64,000 nt of DNA from Takakia lepidozioides. Its lineage: Eukaryota; Plantae; Bryophyta. The stretch covers positions 19,468,001-19,532,000 of the forward strand of contig CM060733.1 in assembly GCA_030704615.1 (NCBI GenBank), read 5' to 3'. Under the pieces are notes generated by a model, which ran no database searches, was not told the DNA's origin, and was given only the letters and a program-made list of their open reading frames with translations. Below, one piece after another: positions 600-33,902 of this stretch (position 1 is its first letter; each line of letters starts with the position of its first letter). Both the position numbers and the translations under genes were made by a program.

Positions 600-2096
600 T
601 CAAGATGCTTTTTGACCAAAAGACTCTGACAGAGACTGCACCTGAGATTCAAACGGTTTTTGGTTACCCCATGGGTCCTTAGAAAACCGTCGCATGGAGA
701 ACTTCTCCAAGGGAAAACCAACACATACCCCAGTGAGGGCCAGATCAGCCATCACTCTACCCACAAGAGGTCCCATTTTAAAACCATGTCCGGAAAAGCC
801 AGCAGCAACCAATATCCCACTGTTTCCAGTCCTTATCTGATCTCTCTTACTGTGGCCTGGGAATTGAACACCATTTTGGACAAAGGCTTCTATTTCAACT
901 GTATCACCGTGATCAGGGTCAGCTGCCTCGGGCAACAGGGGCAACCTTTGATCCCTCTTTCCTGCATCTCTCCCACTTCCATTCTGTACAAAGAACCCTG
1001 ACCTGATATTCGGAATATTGATTCCAACCATCTCAGCTTTAGAACATGGAAGATAATCTAAAATAAAATCTTCATCAGGAGTCATGGAGTATACACATCC
1101 CTCTGCAATGATGGGGGCCTCTGACTTCACACTCCCTTTGAAACGTGATACCAGCCATGGGCTGACAACCCCCTTCAAGACCTCCATATTAGCGGCAACT
1201 GACCGCTTGTCAGGATCACAAGGTATGCCCGAATGAACAGAAACCTTCAGGAGACCAGGGTACTCAATGGACGGTGTTCCGTAGATATAAGGCTCACCAT
1301 AGTCTGCAAACACAGGGAACCCCCTTGCTGCTGAAAAAGCATCAGCGCTAGATTTCTCAACCGCCCAATATGCAGTGGATGTATGCAGTGGTCTGATCGG
1401 CAGCTCTAACCCTGAAATTTCTCTTACAATTTGGGGGGTCCAGGCACCTGCTGCTAGGAGACATGCACGACCTAGAGCAGCGCCCCGGACAGTTGCCAAC
1501 AAAATGCCGTCTGACCCATCTGGGAGTCTCCAGTTCGAGGACACCCTCAGCACTTTTGCTCTGTCTCTCAACACCGCACCATGTTTGGCTGCCAGGGCCT
1601 GAAACATTGCTACTGCCTTCGAAGCTCGAATTATTCCACCCTGAGCAGTGTACACAGCAAGCGAATTTTCTGGCAACTTGAATGCTGGAAAGCGGGTTGC
1701 AACTTCTTCAGGGCTCAGGACCTGGTGCGCAATCCCCTCCTTTTGAAGAGACGAAATAACAGCTTGAAGGCTCCCACTCTCACGGGGCCCAAAATCCAAC
1801 TGACCTGTTCGCTGGCATACCATATAGCCAGCTTCACTCTCTGCCTGTTCCCAAAGTTTGTAAGCTTCCTTCATCATGCGTATGTAATAGTCTTCAGGAT
1901 ACGTCACCCGGATGGTTCTAGATTCCCCATGTGACGAGCCCCTCCGATGGAGAAAATCGAACTGTTCCAGCAAGAGAACTGTCTTGCCCCTTTTTGCAAT
2001 TTGGTAGGCAGCACAGCTACCCATAATACCGGCACCCACGATCACCACATCATACACCCCACTAACCTCCCCACCCTCCTTTGAATCTCCTGCCAT
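600..2096 (-). CDS. SOX: Sarcosine oxidase / pipecolate oxidase family FAD-dependent oxidoreductase (498 aa, intronless CDS)
   Basis: N-terminal dinucleotide-binding motif DVVIVGAGIMGS, family motif GSSHGESRTIR, CVYSMTPDEDFILD (flavinylation Cys region) and C-terminal GFSGHGFKMGP. Confidence 0.93.
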   Translation of the reverse strand: MAGDSKEGGEVSGVYDVVIVGAGIMGSCAAYQIAKRGKTVLLLEQFDFLHRRGSSHGESRTIRVTYPEDYYIRMMKEAYKLWEQAESEAGYMVCQRTGQLDFGPRESGSLQAVISSLQKEGIAHQVLSPEEVATRFPAFKLPENSLAVYTAQGGIIRASKAVAMFQALAAKHGAVLRDRAKVLRVSSNWRLPDGSDGILLATVRGAALGRACLLAAGAWTPQIVREISGLELPIRPLHTSTAYWAVEKSSADAFSAARGFPVFADYGEPYIYGTPSIEYPGLLKVSVHSGIPCDPDKRSVAANMEVLKGVVSPWLVSRFKGSVKSEAPIIAEGCVYSMTPDEDFILDYLPCSKAEMVGINIPNIRSGFFVQNGSGRDAGKRDQRLPLLPEAADPDHGDTVEIEAFVQNGVQFPGHSKRDQIRTGNSGILVAAGFSGHGFKMGPLVGRVMADLALTGVCVGFPLEKFSMRRFSKDPWGNQKPFESQVQSLSESFGQKAS

Positions 2097-3680
2097 GGCT
2101 GTGATTCAGCCTAATTTCCTTCAAATCAAGATGAAGGTCTGCTTCAGTCAGTAAACATTTCTACTCCCCTGACTCATTGTACAAGTGCTAACAAGATCAT
2201 ATGATTGTCAAGCCCAAATGGGTAGGTATCTGTGCGACACTGCTTTCTACAAGTTCTCTAGCAGATATTCGTGAATTTGAGCAGTGACTGCCATGTGCTT
2301 GTCAGTGTTGCTGGCCTCTCATTCCGAATCCATTTAATGTCAAACTTTTGTAACAATTGTTTGGACATGAATGAGAGTCAAGTAAAGGCGTGAATCCAAT
2401 ATTGTTGCAGATCAATTGAACAGAACCAGCTAGCATGTGCAGCTATTGGTGAGTTTCTGCCTCTGCCACACAACTTTATTGAAAGCCATTGAGATTTGAA
2501 AAACCAGGCCATGCAGATTATACAGAGAGTCTACACCAAACCTCCCTTGGCAGCTGCCAGGGAAAGCCTGAGCATCCTTCACACCAAAGGATATGTTCTA
2601 AAGCAAATGAGATTTGGTGACATCTGACAAAGGGATCAAGGAGCCCTGCTGAAAACATAAAGTCAAACTTTTCATGAAGTTAGGCCAGCTCTTCAAGTGA
2701 ATGTTAGGAAGCACTGTCGTTCTCTCCAGCAGTGCACTAGCAGGTATGCTTTGGACGATCTAGCTTTTCAGACAACCCACCATAAGAAGAACGGTATCAG
2801 CAATGACACAACCAAACGCCATTCTTGCTCAAGATCTTCCCTCTTCGTTCTCTAGTAGGATGGATGCTTATAGGATTACACAGCAGGAATACCAGGTAAC
2901 GTTAGCCAACGTGAAGAAATTCAAAGTCGCCGTCGTGAAGTGCGTCCGCAATGACACTCGCTATGGTAATGCACGTGCGTATCCAAAGCTGCAACCTCTT
3001 CCACACTGCCCCTGCAAAGCACAGCAGCAGAGGCCACCCCAACTTCATCTCTTGTCTTTTTTCTTTTGTCCACTCACACCACCAACATCCCTTCCACCTT
3101 CATTGTGCAGCCAAGGCTATGAACACAGTCTGTGTGTGCCACAAGATGCAGAGTCAGAGGTAGAGCGTGCGGGAAAGGTCTTAACATGCTCATACTCTAG
3201 TATTCTTCAAATAACAATAGTTGATTTCTACCGTGAACAGACTCCTCTGTAGAGAGAGAGAGAGAAAAGCAAGTTGAAGCGTTCAATATAATCCTGACCC
3301 GGGACCCACTGGCGTTGCTCCCAGCACAAGCAGGAATTCCGAAGACGGAAGCGCTACATTGAGAGGCAGAATCTAAAGGGAGACACACAAACGGAAAGTG
3401 AAACGCAAACACAGAAGGACGAGAGGAGGCGTCTACGTTTAGGTAAAATGCTGTCAAAAGGATGCAAGGGCGGACCCACACTACCATAGATTGTTCATGT
3501 AACACAATAAAACACCAGATGTTCCAATTCGATTGCGCAGAGAGCACGAAACCGCAAGAGAGAGAGAGTTCGAAGCCGGCGGAACCGGGGGAGAAAATGT
3601 AGCCCCAGAGACAAATCCCGAAACAAGCCAAATCCTCCTGCCCTGTCCAGGGTTTCCTTTCACTTTCCCATCCAATTAGC
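2097..3680 (-). other. Probable multi-exon 5' leader of the SOX gene
   Basis: Minus-strand splice sites bracket candidate exons 3232-3246 (15 nt, (CT)n-ACAG acceptor, GTAGAA donor), 2893-3011 (TTTGCAG/GTATTC) and about 2542-2646. A further acceptor lies near 2140, just upstream of the ATG. Confidence 0.45.
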
Positions 3681-4482
3681 TCGCCTTTACTTTATACTAA
3701 TTCTCTCCCCTTCACACCACCATCGCTCGGATTATTTATCCCAAGTCTACAGTACGTAATCTAGACCTCAAATCAAACAATCCTTGAATTGGTCTCTCTT
3801 GACACGGTCAACATTGGAACCATTCCTTGCAACAAGTCCTCCATCAGGAGCTCGAACAGTGCAGGGAGATTGTGGCCTCCATCGCGAGTGATGAAGACGA
3901 GCAACTCCAGAACATTGCGGACCTTCAAACTTATGGCAACACGTAGGAAGCACGGGGAATGACCCGTGTTCGAACCCCGTAGCCCCTCCCTGATGGACCT
4001 CGTGGGCGTACGTAGGTAGGTAGGTAAGGCACGCATTCATCCAAATAGTCGTACTGTCCCAATCCCCGTGTATGCGGTTCCATCTACTCCATCCTACCTC
4101 GGTCCTGTCACCGTATTATGTACGTGGAGATATCAAGTCCAAAAAATACTAGTATTTCATTTTAATTTTTAATTATGTAATTGAAAAAGAAAATAAGTTC
4201 CCACCTTGCGAACAGGGGTGAGTCTGATCTGCTGAGTTTTGCAGGGCAGAATCTTCCAGGCTTTGAATGTGTGAATGGTCCATAGATGGTCGGCAAAGGG
4301 AGAAAATGTGGTCAGGGAAATTTCATGTGGCTTACACAGATGTCCAGATCGAAGAAAGCGTGAAGGGTGTGGTGCGGTTTCCTGGGATATGGTGAACGGT
4401 GGATATACTTGAGTTTTCATCGATTTGCTGCTGAATTTCACCTAAAGCATGTATTAGATGCCTGCAGTGCAGGCTGTGCGAG

Positions 4483-7400
4483 ATGAAGGGGAATGTAGAC
4501 ACATACGGTCAGCTCTGTCGGACTTTGGTCGAGCTATATGATGCTGCTGACAACGTTTTCAATGTCATTACTACTCGGGTATGTGTTTGTTGCTTACCTG
4601 GTTCTTTGGAGAGATTGAGGAAGAGATAGGTCAAATTTGAGGGTTTAGGGTTTAATCTCACCTGAGAGAGAGAGAGAGAGAGAGAGAGATTGTTGTGATT
4701 AAGTTTAGGAAAGTGAAGAATTTTTGCTGGTAGATGTAGCTACTTAACTTTTGAGCTAGTTTCTGGTGCATGTAATTTGTCGTCGTGGTAATCGTTGCGA
4801 CATCTCAAGGAAGGAATCTGGCTGAGGGATGAGTCAAGAGAATAGTGCTGAGTGGAATGTTATGAGGCTGTCATCGCATACAATCTTGCAGTCTCAAGAT
4901 GGCATCCCAACGGGAGGTGCATGGATGCAGGTAGGTCTCGAGCATCAACGACTTCATGATCTTTCTACCAGGATCCAAGCGACACAGGTATTCAGCAATT
5001 GAACCATCAACTTTGCTAAAGTTTTTGTTTTTCCACAGGTGTGGGTAGTTTCAGAACCCAGATCTTCAGAACAGGAATGCTTTGGTTTCACCCCCAGTGA
5101 CAAAGAGATAATTGGCTTTGTATTGAACCTCCCAGCATGGTAATTGTTTAAATTTTCATTTTCCATTCTAGCAGTGATAACCATGCTGACCAAGAGACAG
5201 CTATTGGTGTTTTTTATTTTATTGCATTTGATCACTTGGAGGCAGTTTCTGTCGTTTGGAGGCAATGTGTGTGCTTCTGTTCAGCTTTCTTGAAGCTTTG
5301 GAGGACCATCTGTTAGGAAGCTGTCAAGGTCTACCACTCTATGCCCTCCCTGTCAATAGTGGGATAGATGTGACAAGGACGTTCTCACTACAAGTTCTAT
5401 TTTCATGTAGAGCTAATTTAACCTAGCATTCTTTTGCTTTTGACAGGCCAAGGTGGCCGTACTATCTGGCACAAAGCGTGCTATTACTGTGGTTTCCTCT
5501 GCCAAGTATCCTCGGATCCCCCCGGAAGATACAGACTTTGTTCCCTTGTTTGGGGGCAAGGTAGAAGGCCATCAGTCACAACTTCCTATAGCAACACTTT
5601 CTCTCAATTCTGGCCAAGGGCAGGTGCACTCAAAGTTTCCAATATTCTTCCCACTTTGGTGTGCTCCAAAGTGGTTTTGACTTTGAATGGATGTTTCATG
5701 TGTAGTTAAGTTTGGGTTTTCTCCTGTTGTCTCTACCCCTTTCCCCCCCTTCCCCCTTGTATAACTGGTAAAGCTGGAAGGCAGAAAAATGGCGTGGGCT
5801 GATGTACAGAAACACAACACAGAACGTGAGGGTTCAACCCAAAAGTGGATGTCTGGCCACATTTAACACTCGTCTACTAGACAGAAAATCATCTTTCCAA
5901 GCAGTTAGCATATGGAGGTCCAAGAGTCCATTTTGGAAGATTGTGTAGTTCATGGTTCATCTTTTCTGGCATTGTTACAAATTTGAGAATTGTCACAATT
6001 GCACTTTTGGTGTTTAATAATAAAGGGTTGTCCATCAGCATCCACCTGTGTATTTTTCATGGGCTCTCAAGGGACTGCAAATAAGCTCACTGCAAAATTG
6101 AGATCACATTTTTTTGAGAACCAGACAGTACTGTTACCAGCAGCTCAGAGTAAAAGATAGATCTTTGTTTCGGCATTCCATCTTGTCTATTTCTGCCTCT
6201 CAGGTCATCCCTCAGTCTGTATGATCGTGCCTCTTTCTCAAGCATAAAGCCATATGGTGTTTTCTCTTTTGTTGCATACCTGCACGGGATCTTATCCACT
6301 AGGAAGCTTGTGTTGTGAAGTTCCTTCTATACATCTCGGCCAAGTTCAGACAGGAGTATATAAACGTAGTTGAACTATTTTTGGACTGAAGTTGTACGTA
6401 TCAATTTGCAGAGAAATGGAGAGGAGGGGACACTCGAGCTATTTCGATTTTTCGCCGAGACCAGCCATGAATACTGGCCTAGGGAGCACAAACTCAAAGT
6501 GATTCTCATACTGTGGCCTGCTTTGGCTAAGGAGGATCCTGGTTGTTACAACAATCAAAGAAATATCATGCAGTTCCTTATAGAGGATTGAGGATCTCAA
6601 GGCCAGGGGTTGGGTTTTGGGGAGGGAGATGAGGTGAAGACTGTGTGGTTTTGGCTCTTAAGGGAGGAGGAGGAAGCTATGTCTATTGCATGACCTTTTG
6701 ATCAAGCAGATTGCTAGGGATGGGCAACACACTGGGCTGCTAAACCATACACTGTATTTTGATAACAGGAAGGGATTGGAAAGATGCCAGCTGGCATCAA
6801 ATCAGTGGCGGATGCTATGCTTTTCAATACTACTGAGCTTCCCTACCATCGGTGAGTCAGTTGGCTTGGCTGGATGCATTTCTTATAGAGAAGCGGAAGA
6901 AAAAAAAGGATATAATTTCCACAGGGGGCCCTACCAGAGTTGGTATTTCTTTTGGCTTGCCAAGGTTGTCATCAGGTCTCTATGAGGGTTTGGATCTGTG
7001 GGCTTCTAAATGAAGAAGGCATTGTTAGGAATCTTTTGTGGGATTCCACTGCTACCTTGAGTGGGCTGGCTGGTTCCATCACCACATTTTGTCTTTTGAG
7101 CTCTTTAGGCTGCTTGTGCTTCATGACAGTTCCAGAAGATTGGGCTTCTTTCTCGGAAGGCTCCTCAGTTTCGTTTCCTTTGTGGTTGTTGCATGTTTGG
7201 TATCTTTTGGCTTCTAATATTTTTGACCTGGGGACTTGATCTTTTCCTCCTTTACCAAAAAATAAAAAAGAGGGGTCAGATGAGGTCAGAACTTCACACT
7301 GTAACTTTGAGAGTATTTTGAATCCACCCTCTAACTAGGATTCTTGTTGAATGGAGTCTTTGAATCCTCTGTGTGTGGTCCTCCTCCAGATACAGGATGG

Positions 7401-10400
7401 TTGATAATTTGACGGGGGCAGACCTGCCAGTTGGAGAAGAGGATCCCAAAAACAAACCTGCTCCCCTGCCTGCCCCGCCTCAAAGTGTGCTCACGGGTGA
7501 TGCATTTGTACGTGCCCAGCATCTTCATTTGCTACTCTGATCAGTGCAAGTTTTCACATAAATATTAAGATGGAGCTTTCTGGGGCTCCATCGGGGGCTG
7601 GAACAGTGACACAACTTTTGGTGTTGGTTTCTGTAGGGCTTATTAGGAAGTGAATAATTTATCTCAGGTATATAGCCCATTGATCTCTGTATATTGAACT
7701 TGTGGCTGTCCTTAAGACATCGTCAATGTTGCTAATCAATCTTCTTCCTTCTCTGGGTTCTTGCAAGCTGCATGCAGGTGCAATCCTTCTAGGTCCTTTT
7801 GAGCGAAGTGAGTACTAGAGACTATACTTGGCACCATAAGATCATTAACCTCTGCATACTAGTGCCAAGAAGTCGTAAGACAAGGAAAGTTTGCCACTCT
7901 AACAAGAACGTTGGGAATGGGTGTATAGCCTACATTAGGCATTGAAGAGTATGGGTTCAGACCCACTCTGGGGCAGGTACCATCCTTCAGCTTGCCATCG
8001 ACTCTTCCTAATCTGCCTATGGTTGCAGAGATAAGCTGGAGTGGTAGGCTGCTCTCCCTCTTTATTTTCTTGAAAAGAGCTTTTTGGGGTGTAGTCTCCT
8101 CCCTCTCTTTTCTTCAGGGTTGCACCTTGGATTTGTGTAGCCAGATGTAAAGGCAGTGTTGCAGCTTTGTGCTAGTGATCTTTACCTTTCTGGAATTCTA
8201 TCCGATGTTTTTGGGTTGCATCAATGAGCATTAAACCTGGCTGATTGAGCAACAGTGGAGGAATGAGTCTCCAATTTTGTTGCCTGGAATGCCATGATAT
8301 ACGGAATCAGTTTACTAGGGATGTGTTCTTTACATCCTTTTGCTTGATAAACACATTTGGTGTAATGAGTGGCAGGCATATTTGGCGCGTATGGAACACA
8401 ATAGCCTCCCTGATATCAGATTGCTGCTGTTTCGTAAGGTCAGTAAGCTCCCATGGATGCTAACATGTCTTATTTTTTTTCTTAATTGCAGGAACCACCA
8501 GTCACCTGGACTCTCAGCCATCCATTGCTCCCTCAGCTGGACATCGTACAACTACATCCTTGGGTGATGGTTCAGCCATGGGGACTCCCACAAAGAGTGA
8601 TACCAACTCATTAGATGGTGAGTTCAGTCTATTCCGAGTCAGGTTCTGTTAAGCTTTGTTTAGTAGTCCTCCACGCATCTGTAAAATTGGCTGGTGATGA
8701 GGAGAAACACAATAGCGTGTACAAATCACAAGAGTCTTTGGATGGCCAGATACACAGTATTTGCCAATGTCAACTCCCTGCACTTGTACAATTCCACGCC
8801 TTGAAGAAAACAGTAAAACAGAAAGGTCTCCCTTGATGAGGGCTGGGTAGCTTCACTTTACTGACTGTTTAGCTCTGATGTGATCATTTGAGTGGTTGGC
8901 AGGTTCAATGCGTGGCTTTGATGAGGTTTCATCGACTGCCCCCTCAGTCCTTAGTAGGGGTACATTACGATCTCCGCTCGGGGCTTCATTCATCGAGAGA
9001 GCCAGTCCAGTTAGCGGTAAGTATCTGAGATCTCAGCTTCTTTGCTGAGAGGTGATGTGCTCTCTTTCACTCACCGAAAGCCATGGACTGCTGCAAGACT
9101 ATGGCATGCAAAAGCTTCATGATTTCAAACACCAGGTGCTTGTGCTTGGAATCTTCACCAATTAGTCTCCTCTTCGTTGTCGTTTTGGTTTCTATTTACT
9201 CTTGTTTTCTTGAATGGTCTGAAATACAGGTGTTTCAAATGAAGTGCCAGCTGTTGAAGCCAAGGAAAGAGTAATCCAACCCCCTCCCCCGCCACCACCG
9301 CCCCCGCCCCCACCTCGACTTTCACCATCACCCATCCGTTCAGCTGGTGAAAATCATGCTTTAATTGCTACATCCTCGACTTCTAAACCTAGTGCAGATA
9401 GACCCAAGCCAAAAAGACGATCAGAAGGGGGAAGTCAACGAGTTCCTTTGCCTCCTGCAGCCCCTCCTCTTCCTCCAGTAGGTAAGCGTGACTCTCCCCT
9501 TGTTCTGGCTCTGTTGTCGACACTAACTCTGTCTGCTCTCTCTATCTCTATCGTCCTTGCATGCAAAGGAATCTACAGTGCAATAGCTGGAATTCTTTGC
9601 GGAATGTGGCATGAGGCACAGTTTAGTGCCTTGTCAATGCACACGGTAACATAGATGGGTCACCTTCTGTATCATTGTTGGTCAAAGCACGAAGACACCT
9701 ATATTAAGAAAAGTTGATCATGAGAATCTTGTGCTTGTAAGTACTAGTAGAATGAAATGAAATGGTGCTTTACAAAGAAAGACAACTAAAAGAAAAATCG
9801 GAGCAAATGTGCTGACATTTTTCATGCATGGGGAGGGCAGATGGGCCACGTGCGGCATTACTGGCGTCAATTCGTGAGCCCAGCATACAACTTCGGAAGG
9901 TACTTCTTGGTGCTAGAGGGTACCAGACCTTTACCTCTATGGTGCAGGAGAATTTTGCTTGTCAGTCTATCTATATTTATCTTGTCTTGCTGTCCCTTGC
10001 TTAGCATGAATGAACCTTCCAAGGTCTGTGACTTGTAGACAGGGATTGCAGAAGGTACTAGGCCATCCTTGGAGCAGATTGCGGGGACCCCCACGGAACG
10101 AAATGATGGCAACCGTGCTGGCTTCTCTGGAGCGAGGCAGGTACATTAAGATGAGCAGCTGCACTGGATTGATCTGAAGAATGAAATCATTTCAACACTC
10201 TTCCTTACTTCATGTCTTGTTTCGTACATTTAAATACTCAAATGCTCTTTTCATTCAGTTGGTTCCAGTTTTTTAATTAATGTTGAGAACATAGACACTC
10301 GACAGAAAAGACTTGTCTGCTGAATTTTAGCAACAGCTGTTCTGATCCCAGAAAGATTATTTCTGTCTCACCCTGTCCAGAGCATATCTTACCTTGCAAA

Positions 10401-12291
10401 TCGTCTATGTGTCTGTTCTACGCTGCCAAATCTGGGCATATAACAATACTAGGGTCAGGAGGATGGAGGAAGGAGGGATGCATGTGATGTTGTCTGTCAT
10501 TGTGGATTCTTTGGATAAAACTATTTGAACTGAAGATACTGTTTGACAGAAGATGGCACTTTGGTTGCTTTTGGTTGAGGTCTTGGCAGCCTGTTGATGT
10601 ACTGGCTGAGATGGCTACCACCCTTAAAATGAGGAGGCTCTCCATGCGTGGCGCTGCCCATGACAAAGTATTTTTCCACAACCTTCCTGTCTTCTGTACC
10701 CCTTCTCTATCTTTTCTCTTCCCTATACCTATCCCTACCCTCCCCTGCACAAAACCCAGAGTGACGGGCCAAAGCCTCCTGTGCACTGCACACTCCCCAG
10801 GCATGTCATTTCTGTGGTAAACAGAGGGCTATAAAACTGAAATCAATAACCCTGCAACCAGACTGTCGAGTTTGCATGCAGACAAGTGCCACTGTGAGCT
10901 CCTTAATGGCAGGTGCGAGAAAATAAGTTTATACCTACAGCTGAGTCGCAAGGATAAGCTAAACCCTTGTGGATGCAAACCCACAAAACGTTCCCGAGGA
11001 TTAGTTTCCTGCTTGGTCAATGGCCATAAGGCTACAGCAAGCCGTTCCCTGAGTACATTTTATACCTATTTCACCTGTTCCCCATTTTCTCTCCATTGTC
11101 TCTGCTGTCCCAAGTGTGTACAAGGTGTAGGGCAGTATGCTATGGCAAGCAATCCATTTGGATATATTGGGTCTGTGGCCACATGGCTACAGCAAGCAAC
11201 ATCTTAGGACTACATTTATTCGAATATATTCCTTCTCACTCTCTTCGTGTCCCTTCCCAAGCACCAATGCTTTAGTAGTTCTGGCTGACAGATCTCATTT
11301 GATCTGTAATGTCCTGAGGAAGGCAAGCCAGAGGTTTTGGGCTTGCTTGACTGTTTTTTGTGATGACGGGCAGGTGGCAGTAAATGTCGGTCAGCCGGCT
11401 GCAGGGTTTGACAACACAGACACCGTCAGTGTGTCCAGTGACACAAACAGGTATTTAGACACTGGAAGACATGTCGACAGTCAGTCTCGAGTATCATCTA
11501 TTTTATTGCATCCAGAGATTGTTTTGTAGTTGTAAAACAGGGGGCTTTGGATGTGTCTTCTCATTCAATTGCTTAGGAAAGTGTGCTGAAAGGCTTAGTG
11601 GACATGAGCTCTGTGAAGTTAGATTTTCTTGTTGATCCTGTTCTTTTTTCATTCCATCTTACCGATAGACACCATCGAAAAAAAAGAGAGGGAGGTGGCT
11701 GGACTCATCATTTATACTCCTTCCCTTGTATGCTTGTTCTAATTGGCAAATGTTTCCATGCGGCCACATTGTGGATGGGATAATGGGAATCTGTGCTCTG
11801 GCAACAGCACCAAGTTCACACTTCCAGTAAGCTCTTCAATTTATGGACCCTTTTTTCTCATGCATCTAACCTAATTCTAGTTTCTTTTGTGCTGTTGACT
11901 TGTCGAGACCTCAAGTATGCCAAAAAACTTGTGAGTGTAGTGGCAAAATGTTCTGGCTGCAACTCATAACCTGCATGGAAAATTACAAGGACAAGTGCCT
12001 ACATCCATAAGTGATGTGACAGTTGGTGTTCTAATTAAGTTGAAGATTACCTTTCTCTTATGACTGTAGGAGAGCATTGGCTTGGCAAATTTGCTGTTTA
12101 GAACATGTTGTAATGTAACTACAATAGATCCCTTCAGGATACAAGTGTCTCAAGAATAATTGTCATATCAGAGAACTAACTGTCCAGGTGCGGTGTGATT
12201 TTGTTGTTTCACCTTGCAGATCTCTAATGTGCATGCTTACATTGCACGCAAGAATCAAGAGTTGAGTGATGATGATGACTGGGAGGAATGA
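4483..12291 (+). CDS. WASHC1: WASH1 / WASHC1 Arp2/3 nucleation-promoting factor (WAHD-polyPro-WH2-C-A), about 543 aa, 16 exons
   Basis: Phase-consistent GT-AG exons: 4483-4578, 4931-4987, 5447-5623, 6412-6498, 6769-6851, 7390-7507, 7929-8043, 8492-8617, 8903-9016, 9230-9481, 9841-9899, 10039-10140, 10590-10667, 11374-11450, 11808-11826, 12220-12291 (1632 nt). WAHD motifs: AKVAVLSGTKRAITVVSSAKYP, EGIGKMPAGIKSVADAMLFNTTELPYHRY, EEYGFRPTLGQVPSFSLPSTLPNLP, SIAPSA. Then a 12-proline run, WH2 (DGPRAALLASIREPSIQLRKT), central domain (DVLAEMATTLKMRRLSMRG) and acidic end (SDDDDWEE*). The start codon is the least certain part. Confidence 0.92.
4664..4689 (+). repeat. (GA)n microsatellite in the first CDS intron of WASH1
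   Basis: Direct reading: about 13 GA units. Confidence 0.9.
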
Positions 12292-14545
12292 AGACCAGCA
12301 CAATTCGTCAGCATGCAGGGAGATGTATATTCTTTGTAGGATCATGTTGATGAGGTTGTGTCCCAAGGTTGGGTCGGGAGACTGTAGGTTGCCTCAAGAA
12401 CACAATCAAATGTGTGATGTCCATTGCACACTTGTGCCAAGAGCTTGAAGATCACATTCTCAATATTGAGACCATCTTAAGAGTAATTTGTGTTGTGCCC
12501 CACTCCCAGGGGTCGACTTCGGTAAAGATTGATGAGTTAAGAAATTGAGTGGGACATTGCGAGTACGCATGTTTGATGCATACTAGTGAGTCTGCTGGAT
12601 TGTGCTACTTTGTGGTGCTAGTTGTGTAATTTTTGTCAGGAGTCATGGAGGTACCACTACCTTGCAATTTGCAATGGCCATTGGAATACAACATTCACTG
12701 ATTTGCTAAACTATCTCTGGTGGAAATCAAAGAGACACCTTGGGATGTCCCAGAAAACCAACTGTGAGAAGCAATGTAGAGCATTTGTTGTGCTGTTTTG
12801 TTGCATTACTACTCTACCAAGCATGTGGGTTGTTAGGAAGCAAGAAACTATGCCAGAGTCTCCATGGGCGAAACTTCAGTTTTGTTGTTGATGGCACTGT
12901 GATCTTGGTCACAGGGGAATGAAAGTGGATAGATTGTGCAAGTATTGTGGGCAGACACGCACCAAGGTAAGATATGTAGCTCTTTGGGATTTTTTTTGGG
13001 CCTTGGTTGTTGGAGCTATGGATGTTCCTTAGTGCCCTCCAGCCTCTCCCACACTTCACTTCACTCAGGCTATGTAGAGGAAGGTGAGTGTAGGCGTTTT
13101 TCCCTCGATTACCTGCTTTTTCTATCATGTGTAACATCTGAAGCATTTGGTGTGAGTGAGTGTCTGTTTGAGAAAATGTACTCAAAAGACGTTGTCTGCC
13201 ATAGCCTGGTGGTCTATGGCACAGAATCCTTGCAATAGCAATTTGAGTTCAAAACTGCCATCCACCCTAAGAGATGGACAAGGGGAAGACACTTCTACAC
13301 ATTGTTATGATGCAGATCCAGACACAAAGGAAGTTACTGATAACCACCCCAGGATCTACTTGTGGGATTTCTACCCATGGTATTGTAGCTGAACCTGGAG
13401 ACGCCATAATGCTCAACTGAGGCCACCAATAGAAATTCACTGTCACTTCTACTGCTGCCTCTCATCCGAAGTGTGCAGTCTAATTGGCAATGTCAATCGC
13501 TTTAGAAGAGAGGTTCAGTTTCTCACACTCCAGACATGAGCAGCGCACATACAATATTGATAGATTGTCAAGACTTTATTTAGCCGCCGTTGCAATCTGC
13601 CATTACCTTCACTATAATGCTTCTTGTAGTACACAGTCTGCTCATGTGATGGCAAACATTTGGACACTCATCTCTCTCAGGCAGCATCATAATTCATTGC
13701 ATATTGCTTGACCTTCTATCCTGGCGAGTAGATCTGCTTTCACGGTGTCAGTTACCTTGCGGATGTTTGTTGTGTGAATGAGGCAGAGAAAGAACCCAGA
13801 CTACCTTTCAGAAATCTCTTCAAAGCTACTTTAGCAAAAGTTCTTATGCTTCTGCAAAGAATGCATTTGGGAGGAGTTCTTCTCAGATGCTTCACAATGT
13901 TGTGCAGCAGGTTTGATAAGGTGAGGATATCTTCACTTAGGATGTGCAAGGGTTTACAATGTACTCATAAGACTTCATTTGCCGTAGGCTTGTGGCCATA
14001 GACCCTGCACCCAGTTTGGACGGGAACAGAGGGAATAGACACTACCTTTGTGAGGGGCTCACTCCAGTAGTGGGACTTACCTTGATATAAACAATTAGTT
14101 CAGGCTCTCCAGATATCCCCTAGAAAAACCCTTCACACAAGCATCAATCTGCTGTGTGTGAGCAGCATGGTTTTCTATTGACTGGATTGTATCTCCAGTT
14201 GCTTAAACCATTGTTGGTCTTCCTGACAAAGTATGAGAGTTTCTATGTGACTCATGATATAGTTCAGGGAGTATAGGTGACCAATTTGAACAATACGAAA
14301 AGCACCAAAAGCACCTCATACTGTCAGTGTGTTGTGTTGTTTGAACGCAGGTTGTTCACAAACAACTTCTGTTATTTGAAAGATGCTTGTAGCTATGGTG
14401 GTGGTATCCTTGTTTGAGTGTGGCTGTAATTGATGCTACAGCTGTCTGGTTACCTGTTATGCTTTCCACAGAGAAGTCCAACATCACCTGACTTCACACA
14501 TAAGTGCACAAACCAGGTCAAACTGGTTTCCCAAAGTAAAGAATG

Positions 14546-31574: not shown

Positions 31575-33902
31575 TTAAGTTGGAGCATGCTGTGGACCCC
31601 ACTCAAGAAGGCACTTTGCGGCATGTTCTGCTAGTTTCACATCGCCATGAACTCTGCAGGCACCAAGCAAGGCCCCCCACAATGAGGCACCTGGTTCTAT
31701 CGGCATTTTGTTAATGATGTCCTGGGCCTTTTCCAATTGTCCTGCACGGCCGAAAAGGTCTACCATGCAGCTAAAATGCTCCACTGTAGGAGTAACGTCA
31801 TGAACTCGACTCATCGAATCAAAGTAGTACCGGCCTTCTTCCACTAGGCCCCCATGGCTGCATGCAGAGAGAAGACACGTGAAGGTGATACCGTCCAGCT
31901 TTATGCCATCCTGTTGCATTTGCTCAAATAACTTCAGGGCCTCTCGACCACAACCAGTCCGAGCATATCCTGCAATCATTGCATTCCATGTGACCACATT
32001 TCGCAGAGTCATATTGTTGAACACTTCATGTGCATCCTTCATGCTTCCAGATTTGGCATACATATCAGCAAGGGCAGTCTCCAGAATGATATCAGGTGAA
32101 ATTCCAGCTTTGATGATGTCAGCATGGACACCTTTGCCCTTTTCCAGGGCTGCAAGAGTGGCACACGCACTGAGAACGTAAATGAATGTTACACTGTCGG
32201 GCTGCACCCCTTCCCATTGCATTTGTACATACATCTCAAAAGCCTCCCTACCACAACCATGCTGGGCATATCCTGCAATGATGGAGCTCCATGAGACCGC
32301 ATCTCGTTGAGCCATGTTGTCAAACACCATACGCGCCTCCTTCATGCTTCCGCATTTGGAATACATGTTAGCAAGGGCAGTCTCAAGAAGGCCATCTGGC
32401 TCAATTCCAGCTTTGATGAACCCAGCATGGACCTCCTTGCCCTTTTCAAGAGCTCCTAGGCTGGCACATGCATTCAGGATGCAAGTGACTGTCACCCTGT
32501 CTGGAGTCAACCCTTTCTGTATCATTTGCTCATACATATCCAAAGCCTCCCCACCACACCCATGCTGAGCATATCCTGCAATGATTGTGCTCCATGAGAC
32601 CACATCTCTTTGATTCATACTTTTGAACACTTCACGCGCTTCCTTCATGCCCCCGCATTTGGCATACACATCAACAAGGGTATTTTCCAGATTCACACAT
32701 GATGGGATTCCAGCTTTGATGATATCAGCATGGACCTCTTTGCCCTTTGCTAGGGCACCCAGACTGGCACACGCATTGAGAACGCAAATGAACGTGATCC
32801 TGTCGGGTCTCACACCTTCCCGTTGCAATTGCTCATAGATATCCAAAGCCTCCCTGCCACACCCATGCTGAGCATATCCAGCAATCATTGCACTCCATGA
32901 GACCACATTTTGTTTAGCCATATTGTTGAAAATTTGACATGCATCCTTCATGCTTCCACATTTTGCATACATGTCAACAAGGGCAGTCTCCAGAATAATA
33001 TCTGGCTTAATTCCAGATGTGATGAAGTCGGCATGGACCTCCTTGCCCTTTTCTAGGACTGCCAGGTTGGCACACGCATTGAGAACACAAATGAAAGTAA
33101 CTCGGTTGGGAGTCACCCCTTCCCATATCATTTGCTGATACATGCCAAAAGCCTCCTTACCACACCCACAGTGAGCATAAGCAGCAATCATGGCACTCCA
33201 TGAGACCACATTTCGATGAGCCATGTTGTCAAACACTTGACGTGCATCCCTTATGCTCCCACACTTGGCATACATGTCAACAAGCGCAGTCTCCAGAATA
33301 ATATCCAGCTCAATCCCAGCATTGATGATGTCAGCATGGATCTCTTTGCCCTTTCTTAGCATTCCTAGGAGAACGCATGCCTTGAGAACGCAAATGAATG
33401 TGACTCTGTTAGGCATCACCCCATCTTCTATCATCTGCTCGTAGATCTGGAAAGCCTCCCTAGCACACCCATGCTTTGCATACCCTGCCATCATTATGGT
33501 ACGCGCCAACACATCTCGTTCAGGCATTTTGTCAAACACTTTGCGCGCATTCACAACACTCCCGCATTTGGCATACATGTTCATAAGAGTGCTCAGTAGA
33601 AATATATTTGGCTTGATACCACTTTGGAACATGTGGACATGCACGTTCTTTCCCCTTTCAAGATCTTTAGTTTTGATGCACTGCTGCAAGAGACAGAGAT
33701 AGATATTTGAGTCTACAGAAATGCCTCCTTGGTTTAAAATGTGCAGTGCCTCTTTCAGTCGACCTGCCTGACAGAGTGTCCTCACATCCCAACAGGTGTC
33801 AGAAGACTGGTTGGCTCCCTCTTCTGATCCTCTTCCAGACACACTGGTCATGGTGAAGTTTCCTGCAGGTTCAAACAACTGTCCCTGATTCAAACCTGCC
33901 AT
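31575..33902 (-). CDS. PLS-class pentatricopeptide repeat protein (organellar RNA-editing factor type), truncated in the E region
   Basis: 775-aa ORF with five highly similar P1-L1-S1 triplets of about 101 aa, then P2-L2-S2 (LLSACSHGGLVEEG..HFSCMVDLFGRAG) and E1 (WGALLGACRVHG). A splice acceptor immediately upstream of the ATG suggests an additional 5' exon. Confidence 0.9.
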   Translation of the reverse strand: MAGLNQGQLFEPAGNFTMTSVSGRGSEEGANQSSDTCWDVRTLCQAGRLKEALHILNQGGISVDSNIYLCLLQQCIKTKDLERGKNVHVHMFQSGIKPNIFLLSTLMNMYAKCGSVVNARKVFDKMPERDVLARTIMMAGYAKHGCAREAFQIYEQMIEDGVMPNRVTFICVLKACVLLGMLRKGKEIHADIINAGIELDIILETALVDMYAKCGSIRDARQVFDNMAHRNVVSWSAMIAAYAHCGCGKEAFGMYQQMIWEGVTPNRVTFICVLNACANLAVLEKGKEVHADFITSGIKPDIILETALVDMYAKCGSMKDACQIFNNMAKQNVVSWSAMIAGYAQHGCGREALDIYEQLQREGVRPDRITFICVLNACASLGALAKGKEVHADIIKAGIPSCVNLENTLVDVYAKCGGMKEAREVFKSMNQRDVVSWSTIIAGYAQHGCGGEALDMYEQMIQKGLTPDRVTVTCILNACASLGALEKGKEVHAGFIKAGIEPDGLLETALANMYSKCGSMKEARMVFDNMAQRDAVSWSSIIAGYAQHGCGREAFEMYVQMQWEGVQPDSVTFIYVLSACATLAALEKGKGVHADIIKAGISPDIILETALADMYAKSGSMKDAHEVFNNMTLRNVVTWNAMIAGYARTGCGREALKLFEQMQQDGIKLDGITFTCLLSACSHGGLVEEGRYYFDSMSRVHDVTPTVEHFSCMVDLFGRAGQLEKAQDIINKMPIEPGASLWGALLGACRVHGDVKLAEHAAKCLLEWGPQHAPT

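What the first reader, a model, noticed from the sequence alone, without database searches (positions are those of the whole stretch)
4483..12291. Complete, intact WASH1 Arp2/3 activator in a land-plant genome, implying an endosomal WASH actin system
Seen: 16 exons splice into an uninterrupted ORF of about 543 aa that the ORF track does not show. It is collinear with animal WASH1 along its length (animal motifs recalled from memory). Matches: SSAKYP (vs KAIKVFSSAKYP), EGIGKMP..MLFNTTE (vs EGLGGLP..LLFNTTE), PTLGQVP..PSTLPNLP (vs PDLGQVP..PSYLPDLP), IAPSA, polyproline, WH2, LKMRRLSMRG (vs LVMRRKGISG) and terminal DDDDWEE (vs EDEDDWES). Known: in animals and Dictyostelium, WASH works with FAM21, strumpellin, SWIP and CCDC53 to build endosomal actin for retromer/retriever recycling, whereas SCAR/WAVE is the characterised Arp2/3 activator in Arabidopsis. 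Inference: this plant retains a second, functionally little-studied Arp2/3 pathway. Automated annotations of homologues may already exist in bryophytes or lycophytes, so the novelty is probably functional rather than a first sighting.
Basis: partly seen in the sequence, partly recalled or inferred. Interest (0 to 1): 0.85.

Follow-up and report, generated by a model that had tools for sequence, protein, structure and literature searches.

The report
Expressed WASH1 gene in a moss-lineage plant
This is a real, intact and transcribed plant copy of WASH1, a protein that in animals and amoebae switches on actin branching at endosomes. Such genes have been reported in mosses, lycophytes and conifers since 2010-2012, so it is a solid but unsurprising find.

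Summary
Sixteen GT-AG exons (4483-12291, + strand) give a 1632-nt frame of 543 codons with no internal stop.

- **Transcripts:** spliced contigs from two public runs (two studies, same organism) reproduce all 12 junctions from exon 4 to exon 16, including a 19-nt micro-exon.
- **Family:** exons 3, 5 and 7 each hit only Pfam WASH_WAHD, in collinear order. Exon 11 hits WH2. Exon 13 carries the C motif (LKMRRLSM) and exon 16 ends DDDDWEE.
- **Relatives:** the closest are WAHD proteins of Sphagnum (about 70% identity, shared intron positions), Ceratodon, liverworts, lycophytes, Ginkgo and Taxus. NCBI already names the Selaginella one "WASH complex subunit 1".
- **Not SCAR/WAVE, a pseudogene or a contaminant.**

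WASH in Physcomitrella, Selaginella, Picea and Ostreococcus was published in 2010-2012 (PMC3298513, PMC3689024), so this is a new member of a known kind.

The inferred endosomal WASH system was not tested. The only leads are unchecked scan notes of FAM21 and CCDC22 genes in the same genome. The scan had noted this gene only on this same stretch, not on other DNA.

The joined protein was sent to no search tool. Searches were made exon by exon.

The parts
4483..4578 (+). Exon 1, start codon at 4483; N-terminal helix of the WAHD
   Evidence: First in-frame ATG after an upstream stop. Aligns to residues 1-33 of the Sphagnum orthologue at 67% identity. GT donor.
4931..4987 (+). Exon 2 (19 aa, VGLEHQRL...)
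   Evidence: 90% identical to Sphagnum residues 32-51, with the intron at the same place. AG/GT ends. Not covered by the transcript laying.
5447..5623 (+). Exon 3 (59 aa, contains SSAKYP); the long donor at 5623 is used, not 5560
   Evidence: Pfam WASH_WAHD 20.3 bits, E 4e-4, profile 63-96. Homologues align without a break to 5623. The transcript loose end at 6408 reads bases 5590-5619.
6412..6498 (+). Exon 4
   Evidence: Joint 6498>6769 seen in a contig of run X2. 88% identical to Sphagnum.
6769..6851 (+). Exon 5 (EGIGKMP..MLFNTTELPYH)
   Evidence: Pfam WASH_WAHD 17.6 bits, profile 148-173. Joints on both sides seen.
7390..7507 (+). Exon 6
   Evidence: Joints 6851>7390 and 7507>7929 seen. 76-79% identical to mosses.
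7929..8043 (+). Exon 7 (PTLGQVP..PSTLPNLPMVAEISW), the most conserved WAHD block
   Evidence: Pfam WASH_WAHD 20.0 bits, profile 220-248. 82-87% identical to mosses. Joints seen in both runs.
8492..8617 (+). Exon 8 (IAPSA, end of the WAHD, start of the linker)
   Evidence: Joints seen in both runs. 62-66% identical to mosses.
8903..9016 (+). Exon 9, poorly conserved linker
   Evidence: Joints 8617>8903 and 9016>9230 seen. Same intron positions as Sphagnum.
9230..9481 (+). Exon 10, proline-rich region (12-proline run at 9280-9315, then PPAAPPLPP)
   Evidence: Read directly from the sequence. Joint 9481>9841 seen in both runs.
9841..9899 (+). Exon 11, the WH2 (V) motif: RAALLASIREPSIQLRK, followed by T from exon 12
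   Evidence: Pfam WH2 19.4 bits, E 8e-4, profile 2-20 of 28. The plant orthologue profile matches the N-WASP, Cobl and WAVE1 WH2 chains in the PDB. Joints seen in both runs.
10039..10140 (+). Exon 12, linker between V and C
   Evidence: Joints seen in both runs. The plant consensus reads LRKT across the E11/E12 joint.
10590..10667 (+). Exon 13, the C (connector) motif VLAEMATTLKMRRLSMRG at 10599-10652
   Evidence: 93% identical to Sphagnum. The two arginines are invariant in 16 homologues. It has the same pattern as bird WASH1, LMSDLFNKLVLRRKGISG. Joints seen.
11374..11450 (+). Exon 14, linker
   Evidence: Joints 10667>11374 and 11450>11808 seen in both runs.
11808..11826 (+). Exon 15, a 19-nt micro-exon (..TKFTLP)
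   Evidence: Joints 11450>11808 and 11826>12220 seen in both runs. KFTLP/LPI is conserved in a moss, Ginkgo and Taxus.
12220..12291 (+). Exon 16, acidic (A) motif DDDDWEE at 12268-12288, stop at 12289-12291
   Evidence: The tryptophan is nearly invariant in the homologues. The tail matches the moss P0018 tail. The transcript contigs continue into the 3' UTR as far as the laid stretch ran, 12340.

Best explanation

Shown here:
- It is a 16-exon, 543-codon gene, and it is transcribed and spliced as modelled.
- Its product has an N-terminal WAHD, a proline-rich stretch and a C-terminal V-C-A module (WH2, LKMRRLSM connector, acidic tail with tryptophan).

Inferred from what is established for WASH in animals and Dictyostelium:
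- The first helices of the WAHD hold the protein in a complex with FAM21, strumpellin, SWIP and CCDC53.
- That complex is recruited to endosomes, where it makes branched actin patches for cargo recycling.

In this plant it would be a second Arp2/3 activator beside SCAR/WAVE.
For: - ORF and splice sites.
- Spliced contigs from two studies with all 12 joints E4-E16 exact.
- WAHD hits on three exons, collinear in the profile, with no other family hit.
- WH2 hit on exon 11.
- Full-length relatives score WAHD at E 1e-28 to 1e-37.
- Named relatives: 'WASH complex subunit 1' in Selaginella and in a bird, 'WASH1 WAHD domain-containing protein' in Riccia.
- Intron positions shared with the Sphagnum gene.
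- The invariant residues of the V, C and A motifs are present.
- Plant neighbours in the window (sarcosine-oxidase-like ORF 72% identical to Ceratodon, a PPR gene).
- Literature: WASH is ancestral to eukaryotes and retained in early-diverging plants (PMC3298513).
Against:
- The other four complex subunits were not searched in this genome. The only indication is an unchecked note of a FAM21 gene.
- A 2013 review states that among plants only Ostreococcus had been reported with all five subunits (PMC3689024).
- Each exon's Pfam score is below the whole-protein cut-off (24.2 bits for WAHD, 23.1 for WH2), because only pieces could be scanned.
- The runs are listed as 'RNA?' (a guess), although intron-less contigs with GT..AG gaps can only come from spliced RNA or cDNA.
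Confidence: 0.85

Rival explanations
1. It is an intact WASH1, but it does not work in the canonical five-subunit endosomal complex. The plant may keep only some partners (for example FAM21) and use WASH for another actin job, or in a reduced complex.
For: A 2013 review reports no land plant with the full subunit set (PMC3689024). Physcomitrium keeps only four COMMD subunits of the Commander partner complex (PMC10187114). Drosophila Wash can act without its regulatory complex in some migrations (PMC4436778 abstract).
Against: The N-terminal WAHD helices that mediate complex assembly in animals (my background knowledge, not checked here) are conserved: exons 1-2 are 67-90% identical to Sphagnum. 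A FAM21 gene is noted in the same genome (unchecked). NCBI annotates a strumpellin homologue even in Amborella, as quoted in PMC4824794.
Confidence: 0.12
2. It is a decaying relic like the N-terminal WASH fragments of grasses and palms, and makes no functional protein.
For: Such pseudogene fragments are described in Sorghum, Oryza, Phoenix and Setaria (PMC3298513).
Against: The frame is open through all 16 exons. All splice sites are canonical and used. The V, C and A motifs are conserved at 75-93% identity to other mosses. The five differences between transcripts and genome lie in linkers or are silent.
Confidence: 0.02
3. It is a SCAR/WAVE gene, another WH2 protein, or foreign (non-plant) DNA in the assembly.
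For: SCAR/WAVE also carries a proline-rich region (in non-plants) and a VCA. WH2 and acidic tails are common to all WASP-family proteins.
Against: No exon hits a SCAR/WAVE domain; only WASH_WAHD and WH2 are hit. The nearest relatives are mosses, and intron positions match Sphagnum. The flanking genes are plant genes.
Confidence: 0.01

Closest known systems
WASH1 / WASHC1 of animals and Dictyostelium (Pfam PF11945 WASH_WAHD plus VCA)
   Same: Same order of parts: WAHD, linker, proline-rich region, WH2, C motif with the paired arginines, acidic tail ending in W plus acidic residues. A profile of the plant orthologues finds bird 'WASH complex subunit 1' at E 2e-30.
   Different: Only about 30% identity to the animal protein. 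The linker between WAHD and polyproline and the stretches between V, C and A are longer and unrelated. Complex partners, endosomal location and activity are untested in any plant, as far as the held literature shows.
Plant WASH homologues already described: Physcomitrella patens, Selaginella moellendorffii, Picea glauca, Ostreococcus (Kollmar 2012, PMC3298513; Veltman and Insall 2010, cited in PMC3689024)
   Same: Same family and domain order, including the regular acidic domain that Kollmar et al. restored by manual gene correction. About 70% identity to Sphagnum and about 67% to Ceratodon over the conserved exons. Intron positions shared with Sphagnum.
   Different: A different species: no protein closer than about 70% was returned by either database search (the joined protein itself was not looked up), so this copy may be unannotated. 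Here the full C-terminus, including the 19-nt micro-exon, is backed by transcripts. Several public models (Sphagnum balticum, Taxus, Ceratodon) are truncated or lose the acidic tail.
SCAR/WAVE, the characterised plant Arp2/3 activator
   Same: Also a WASP-family protein with a C-terminal VCA that activates Arp2/3 from within a five-subunit complex.
   Different: SCAR/WAVE has a different N-terminal domain. No exon here matches it. Plant SCARs lack polyproline (PMC3298513), whereas this gene has a 12-proline run.

Membership tests
WASH1 (WASHC1), WASP family | N-terminal WASH homology domain (Pfam PF11945 WASH_WAHD) | tested here: met
   Exons 3, 5 and 7 each hit only PF11945 (20.3, 17.6 and 20.0 bits) at collinear profile positions. 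Each is below the 24.2-bit whole-protein cut-off on its own, but the rough sum is about 58 bits. Relatives that are 56-70% identical over these exons score 100-129 bits. The joined protein was not scanned.
WASH1 (WASHC1), WASP family | Proline-rich region between the WAHD and the VCA | tested here: met
   A 12-proline run at 9280-9315 and PPAAPPLPP at the end of exon 10.
WASH1 (WASHC1), WASP family | WH2 (V) actin-monomer-binding motif | tested here: met
   Exon 11 hits PF02205 WH2 at 19.4 bits, E 8e-4, covering profile positions 2-20 of 28. That is below the 23.1-bit cut-off because the motif is split by an intron. The LLxxI and LRK residues are invariant in 16 homologues. The plant profile matches the N-WASP, Cobl and WAVE1 WH2 chains in the PDB.
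WASH1 (WASHC1), WASP family | C (connector) helix and acidic tail with a tryptophan, the Arp2/3-binding part | tested here: met
   VLAEMATTLKMRRLSMRG compared with bird LMSDLFNKLVLRRKGISG. The tail DDDDWEE compared with the bird tail EDEDEWES. The two arginines are invariant and the tryptophan nearly so.
WASH1 (WASHC1), WASP family | Assembles with FAM21, strumpellin, SWIP and CCDC53 | not testable with these tools
   Only this 64-kb window can be read. An unchecked scan note reports a FAM21 gene elsewhere in the genome. No note mentions strumpellin, SWIP or CCDC53.
WASH1 (WASHC1), WASP family | Activates the Arp2/3 complex and localises to endosomes | not testable with these tools
   Needs a pyrene-actin assay and imaging. 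No plant study was found in the held literature.
SCAR/WAVE | N-terminal SCAR/WAVE homology domain | tested here: not met
   The Pfam scans covered 14 of the 16 exons at E up to 10 (exons 2 and 15 are under the 20-residue minimum). They returned only WASH_WAHD and WH2.

The most novel reading that the evidence does not exclude
This bryophyte keeps the whole WASH pathway: WASH1, FAM21, strumpellin, SWIP and CCDC53, linked to the retriever/CCC complex. It would use this for actin-driven endosomal recycling, a trafficking route that most flowering plants have dismantled. Plant endosomal sorting would then have been ancestrally animal-like and later simplified.
Probability: 0.4. Interest if true: 0.55.

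Novelty: new member of a known kind. Interest (0 to 1): 0.3.

Why it matters
In model plants, Arp2/3 biology is explained entirely by SCAR/WAVE, and reviews state that seed plants lack WASH. An intact, expressed WASH1 in one more deep-branching moss lineage adds to the case that early land plants had a second Arp2/3 activator, probably endosomal, whose function nobody has tested.

The practical value is a transcript-backed gene model. It shows that the Arp2/3-binding tail depends on a 19-nt micro-exon that automatic annotation tends to miss. Public models that seem to lack the acidic tail should therefore not be read as degenerate.

It does not open a new question. The presence of WASH in such plants has been in print since 2010-2012.

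Tried and rejected
- **Alternative donor at 5560 for exon 3:** rejected. Homologues align through to 5623, and the transcript loose end reads 5590-5619.
- **PDB by sequence:** the Sphagnum orthologue alone found nothing. The plant profile found only WH2 and polyproline matches, so no solved WAHD structure was available to compare. For that reason no structure was predicted.
- **Scan notes:** nothing for strumpellin, SWIP, CCDC53, retriever, COMMD, VPS35L or WASHC.
- **Literature:** no paper on WASH function in a bryophyte was found. One search for evolutionary surveys gave nothing useful. Derivery and Gautreau 2010 (PMC2918762) is not held.
- **Species identity:** not resolved. The neighbouring sarcosine-oxidase-like ORF has no relative above 74% identity; the best named one is Ceratodon at 72%. 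I can only say a moss lineage about equally distant from Sphagnum and Ceratodon.
- **Other features nearby:** Rfam scan of 2000-14500 returned nothing. ORFs of 90 aa or more on either strand in and around the gene have no Pfam hit.
- It was joined only inside the sandbox, to count length and stops and to read the codons at five variant sites.
Full report
**What is in the sequence.** I read 4000-12800 and translated the three + frames. From that I placed 16 exons whose ends are all AG/GT. I enumerated neighbouring AG and GT/GC sites within 4 nt of each boundary. Several nearby combinations also kept the frame open. The one retained, which homologues and transcripts later supported, is 4483-4578, 4931-4987, 5447-5623, 6412-6498, 6769-6851, 7390-7507, 7929-8043, 8492-8617, 8903-9016, 9230-9481, 9841-9899, 10039-10140, 10590-10667, 11374-11450, 11808-11826 and 12220-12291. 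It totals 1632 nt: 543 codons plus a stop, with no internal stop. The joining was done only inside the sandbox, to count length and stops and later to read five codons.

**Is it transcribed and spliced that way?** A look-up of public runs found two runs of one organism from two studies (2017 and 2021). They hold 13-14% of the sampled words of the 7.8-kb stretch, which is about what the exons alone would give.

Their contigs lie only on the exons and skip the introns.
- All 12 joints from E4/E5 to E15/E16 fall exactly where the model puts them, each with GT..AG ends. These include both joints of the 19-nt micro-exon 11808-11826.
- A loose end at 6408 reads the last bases of the long version of exon 3. 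This settles its donor at 5623 rather than 5560.
- The runs are labelled RNA only by guess, but intron-less contigs with canonical gaps can only come from spliced RNA or cDNA.
- Low-depth unspliced pieces lie over intron 11 and inside intron 14.
- The contigs differ from the window at five sites. Four are amino-acid changes in unconserved linkers and one is silent in exon 16. None touches the WAHD, WH2, C or A motifs.
- Junctions E1/E2 and E2/E3 were outside the laid stretch and rest on homology only.

**What family is it?**

- Scanned one exon at a time against Pfam at E up to 10, exons 3, 5 and 7 each hit one family only, PF11945 WASH_WAHD. The scores are 20.3, 17.6 and 20.0 bits, at profile positions 63-96, 148-173 and 220-248, so they lie in the right order.
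- Exon 11 (20 residues by reference 9840-9899) hits PF02205 WH2 at 19.4 bits, E 8e-4.
- Each score is below the curated whole-protein cut-off because only pieces were scanned. No SCAR/WAVE domain or any other family was hit.
- An exhaustive HMMER search with exon 3 returned 17 proteins. The eight longer ones that I scanned (402-558 aa) score WASH_WAHD at E 1e-19 to 1e-36, and several also hit WH2 weakly.
- Word-indexed searches gave names. The named homologues are hypothetical proteins of Ceratodon purpureus, Sphagnum balticum, Marchantia paleacea, Calypogeia fissa, Diphasiastrum complanatum, Ginkgo and Taxus, and "WASH1 WAHD domain-containing protein" in two Riccia species. They also include "WASH complex subunit 1 isoform X1" in Selaginella moellendorffii, a Magnolia sinica protein, and bird "WASH complex subunit 1" at E 2e-30 with the plant profile.

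**Collinearity and orthology.** tblastn of these proteins against the window, run in the sandbox, places their segments on my exons in order.

- Identity over the conserved exons is about 70% to Sphagnum and 67-68% to the two other mosses. It is 52-59% to liverworts, Ginkgo and a lycophyte.
- I fetched the Sphagnum balticum locus. Its annotated exons break at the same protein positions as mine for nearly every intron.
- The consensus of 16 homologues runs unbroken across my junctions. Examples are R|V..EHQRL at E1/E2, LRK|T at E11/E12 and TLP|I at E15/E16.
- The window's neighbours are plant genes. There is a sarcosine-oxidase-like single ORF at 600-2096 (-), 72% identical to Ceratodon, and a PPR gene at 31575-33902 (-). 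Contamination is therefore excluded.
- The organism is a moss-lineage bryophyte roughly equidistant from Sphagnum and Ceratodon. I could not name the species.

**The Arp2/3-activating end.**

- Exon 10 carries a 12-proline run (9280-9315).
- Exon 11 carries RAALLASIREPSIQLRK, with the invariant L, I and K of the family.
- Exon 13 carries VLAEMATTLKMRRLSMRG, with two invariant arginines. Bird WASH1 has LMSDLFNKLVLRRKGISG at the same place.
- Exon 16 ends DDDDWEE, beside the tail EDEDEWES in the bird and DDDDWEE in another moss.
- A profile of the plant proteins matches solved WH2 motifs of N-WASP, Cobl and WAVE1. The PDB holds no chain that matches the WAHD, so no structural comparison was possible.

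**How it most likely works.** Shown: an intact, expressed gene for a WAHD-polyproline-VCA protein. The rest is inferred from the established behaviour of WASH in animals and Dictyostelium:

- the WH2 brings an actin monomer;
- the C helix and acidic tryptophan tail engage and activate Arp2/3;
- the N-terminal WAHD helices dock the protein into the FAM21-strumpellin-SWIP-CCDC53 complex, which retromer and lipids recruit to endosomes.

None of these steps could be tested here. The scan's notebook holds unchecked first-reader notes of a full-length FAM21 gene and a CCDC22 gene elsewhere in this genome, and nothing on strumpellin, SWIP or CCDC53. Background from papers:

- A 2013 review says only Ostreococcus had been reported with all five subunits (PMC3689024).
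- Physcomitrium keeps four COMMD subunits (PMC10187114).
- NCBI annotates a strumpellin homologue in Amborella, as quoted in PMC4824794.

**Comparison with what is known, and novelty.** Kollmar et al. 2012 (PMC3298513) found WASH in Ostreococcus, Physcomitrella, Selaginella and Picea glauca cDNA, with fragments in Pinus and Cycas. They also found N-terminal pseudogene fragments in grasses and palms, and noted that the moss and Selaginella proteins have a regular acidic domain once the gene models are corrected. Yanagisawa et al. 2013 (PMC3689024) discuss this and also cite Veltman and Insall 2010. This gene is therefore one more member of a known kind.

I found no paper in the held library on the function of WASH in any bryophyte. 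This locus does not make that question newly testable.

**Things seen in passing.**

- The public Sphagnum balticum model ends without an acidic tail. Its locus nevertheless contains a KFTLP micro-exon followed by gtaagc, and a terminal reading frame ending DDDDWEE in another frame. The model has skipped the micro-exon.
- The Taxus partial protein stops exactly at KFTLP, and the Ceratodon model is truncated at 402 aa.
- A Magnolia sinica protein has the WAHD, a WH2-like motif and a C-like motif. This sits badly with the statement that seed plants lack WASH (PMC11397296).

**Verdict.** The identification as WASH1 is supported. The "endosomal WASH system" is plausible but untested. Novelty is low (new member of a known kind) and interest is about 0.3.

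Noticed in passing
L001:13219-13447 (Sphagnum balticum locus of P0019): The public Sphagnum model ends without an acidic tail. The locus nevertheless holds a KFTLP micro-exon followed by gtaagc, and a terminal frame ending DDDDWEE in another frame. The annotation appears to skip the 19-nt micro-exon and so loses the Arp2/3-binding tail. The Taxus partial model stops exactly at KFTLP, and the Ceratodon model is truncated at 402 aa.
   Followed up: partly
P0159 (Magnolia sinica LOC131251594, not in the window): An angiosperm protein of 533 aa has a WASH_WAHD domain, a WH2-like KRAALLASIRDPGIVLRKA and a C-like LKMRRLAMQG, but no acidic tail in this isoform. This is at odds with review statements that seed plants lack WASH (PMC11397296).
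   Followed up: partly
window:600-2096 (-): Single-ORF FAD-dependent oxidoreductase (sarcosine-oxidase-like, Pfam DAO E 2e-47), divergently oriented upstream of the WASH gene. The best named relative is Ceratodon at 72% identity, and nothing is closer than 74%, so the species itself appears to be absent from the protein collection.
   Followed up: partly
window:31575-33902 (-): Intronless 775-aa pentatricopeptide-repeat gene. An earlier scan note reports DYW-type PPR genes about 32 kb before the window (s1-479903).
   Followed up: no
window:50520-63110 (+): ORFs with gag-aspartyl-protease, dUTPase and integrase-core hits, which look like remnants of one or two LTR retrotransposons.
   Followed up: no
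window:9892-10049 and 11505-11714: Low-depth contigs of run X1 lie unspliced over intron 11 and inside intron 14. This is pre-mRNA or minor intron retention. Retaining intron 11 (139 nt) would shift the frame.
   Followed up: no
window:10741-10940 (intron 13): Contigs of run X2 match only partly here, at higher depth and with unrelated loose ends. This suggests a dispersed repeat inside the intron.
   Followed up: no
window:9374, 10072, 10103, 11413, 12252: Five single-base differences between the transcript contigs and the window. Four change amino acids in unconserved linkers (codons 373, 440, 450, 502) and one is silent (codon 531). They are most likely differences between strains or alleles.
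   Followed up: yes
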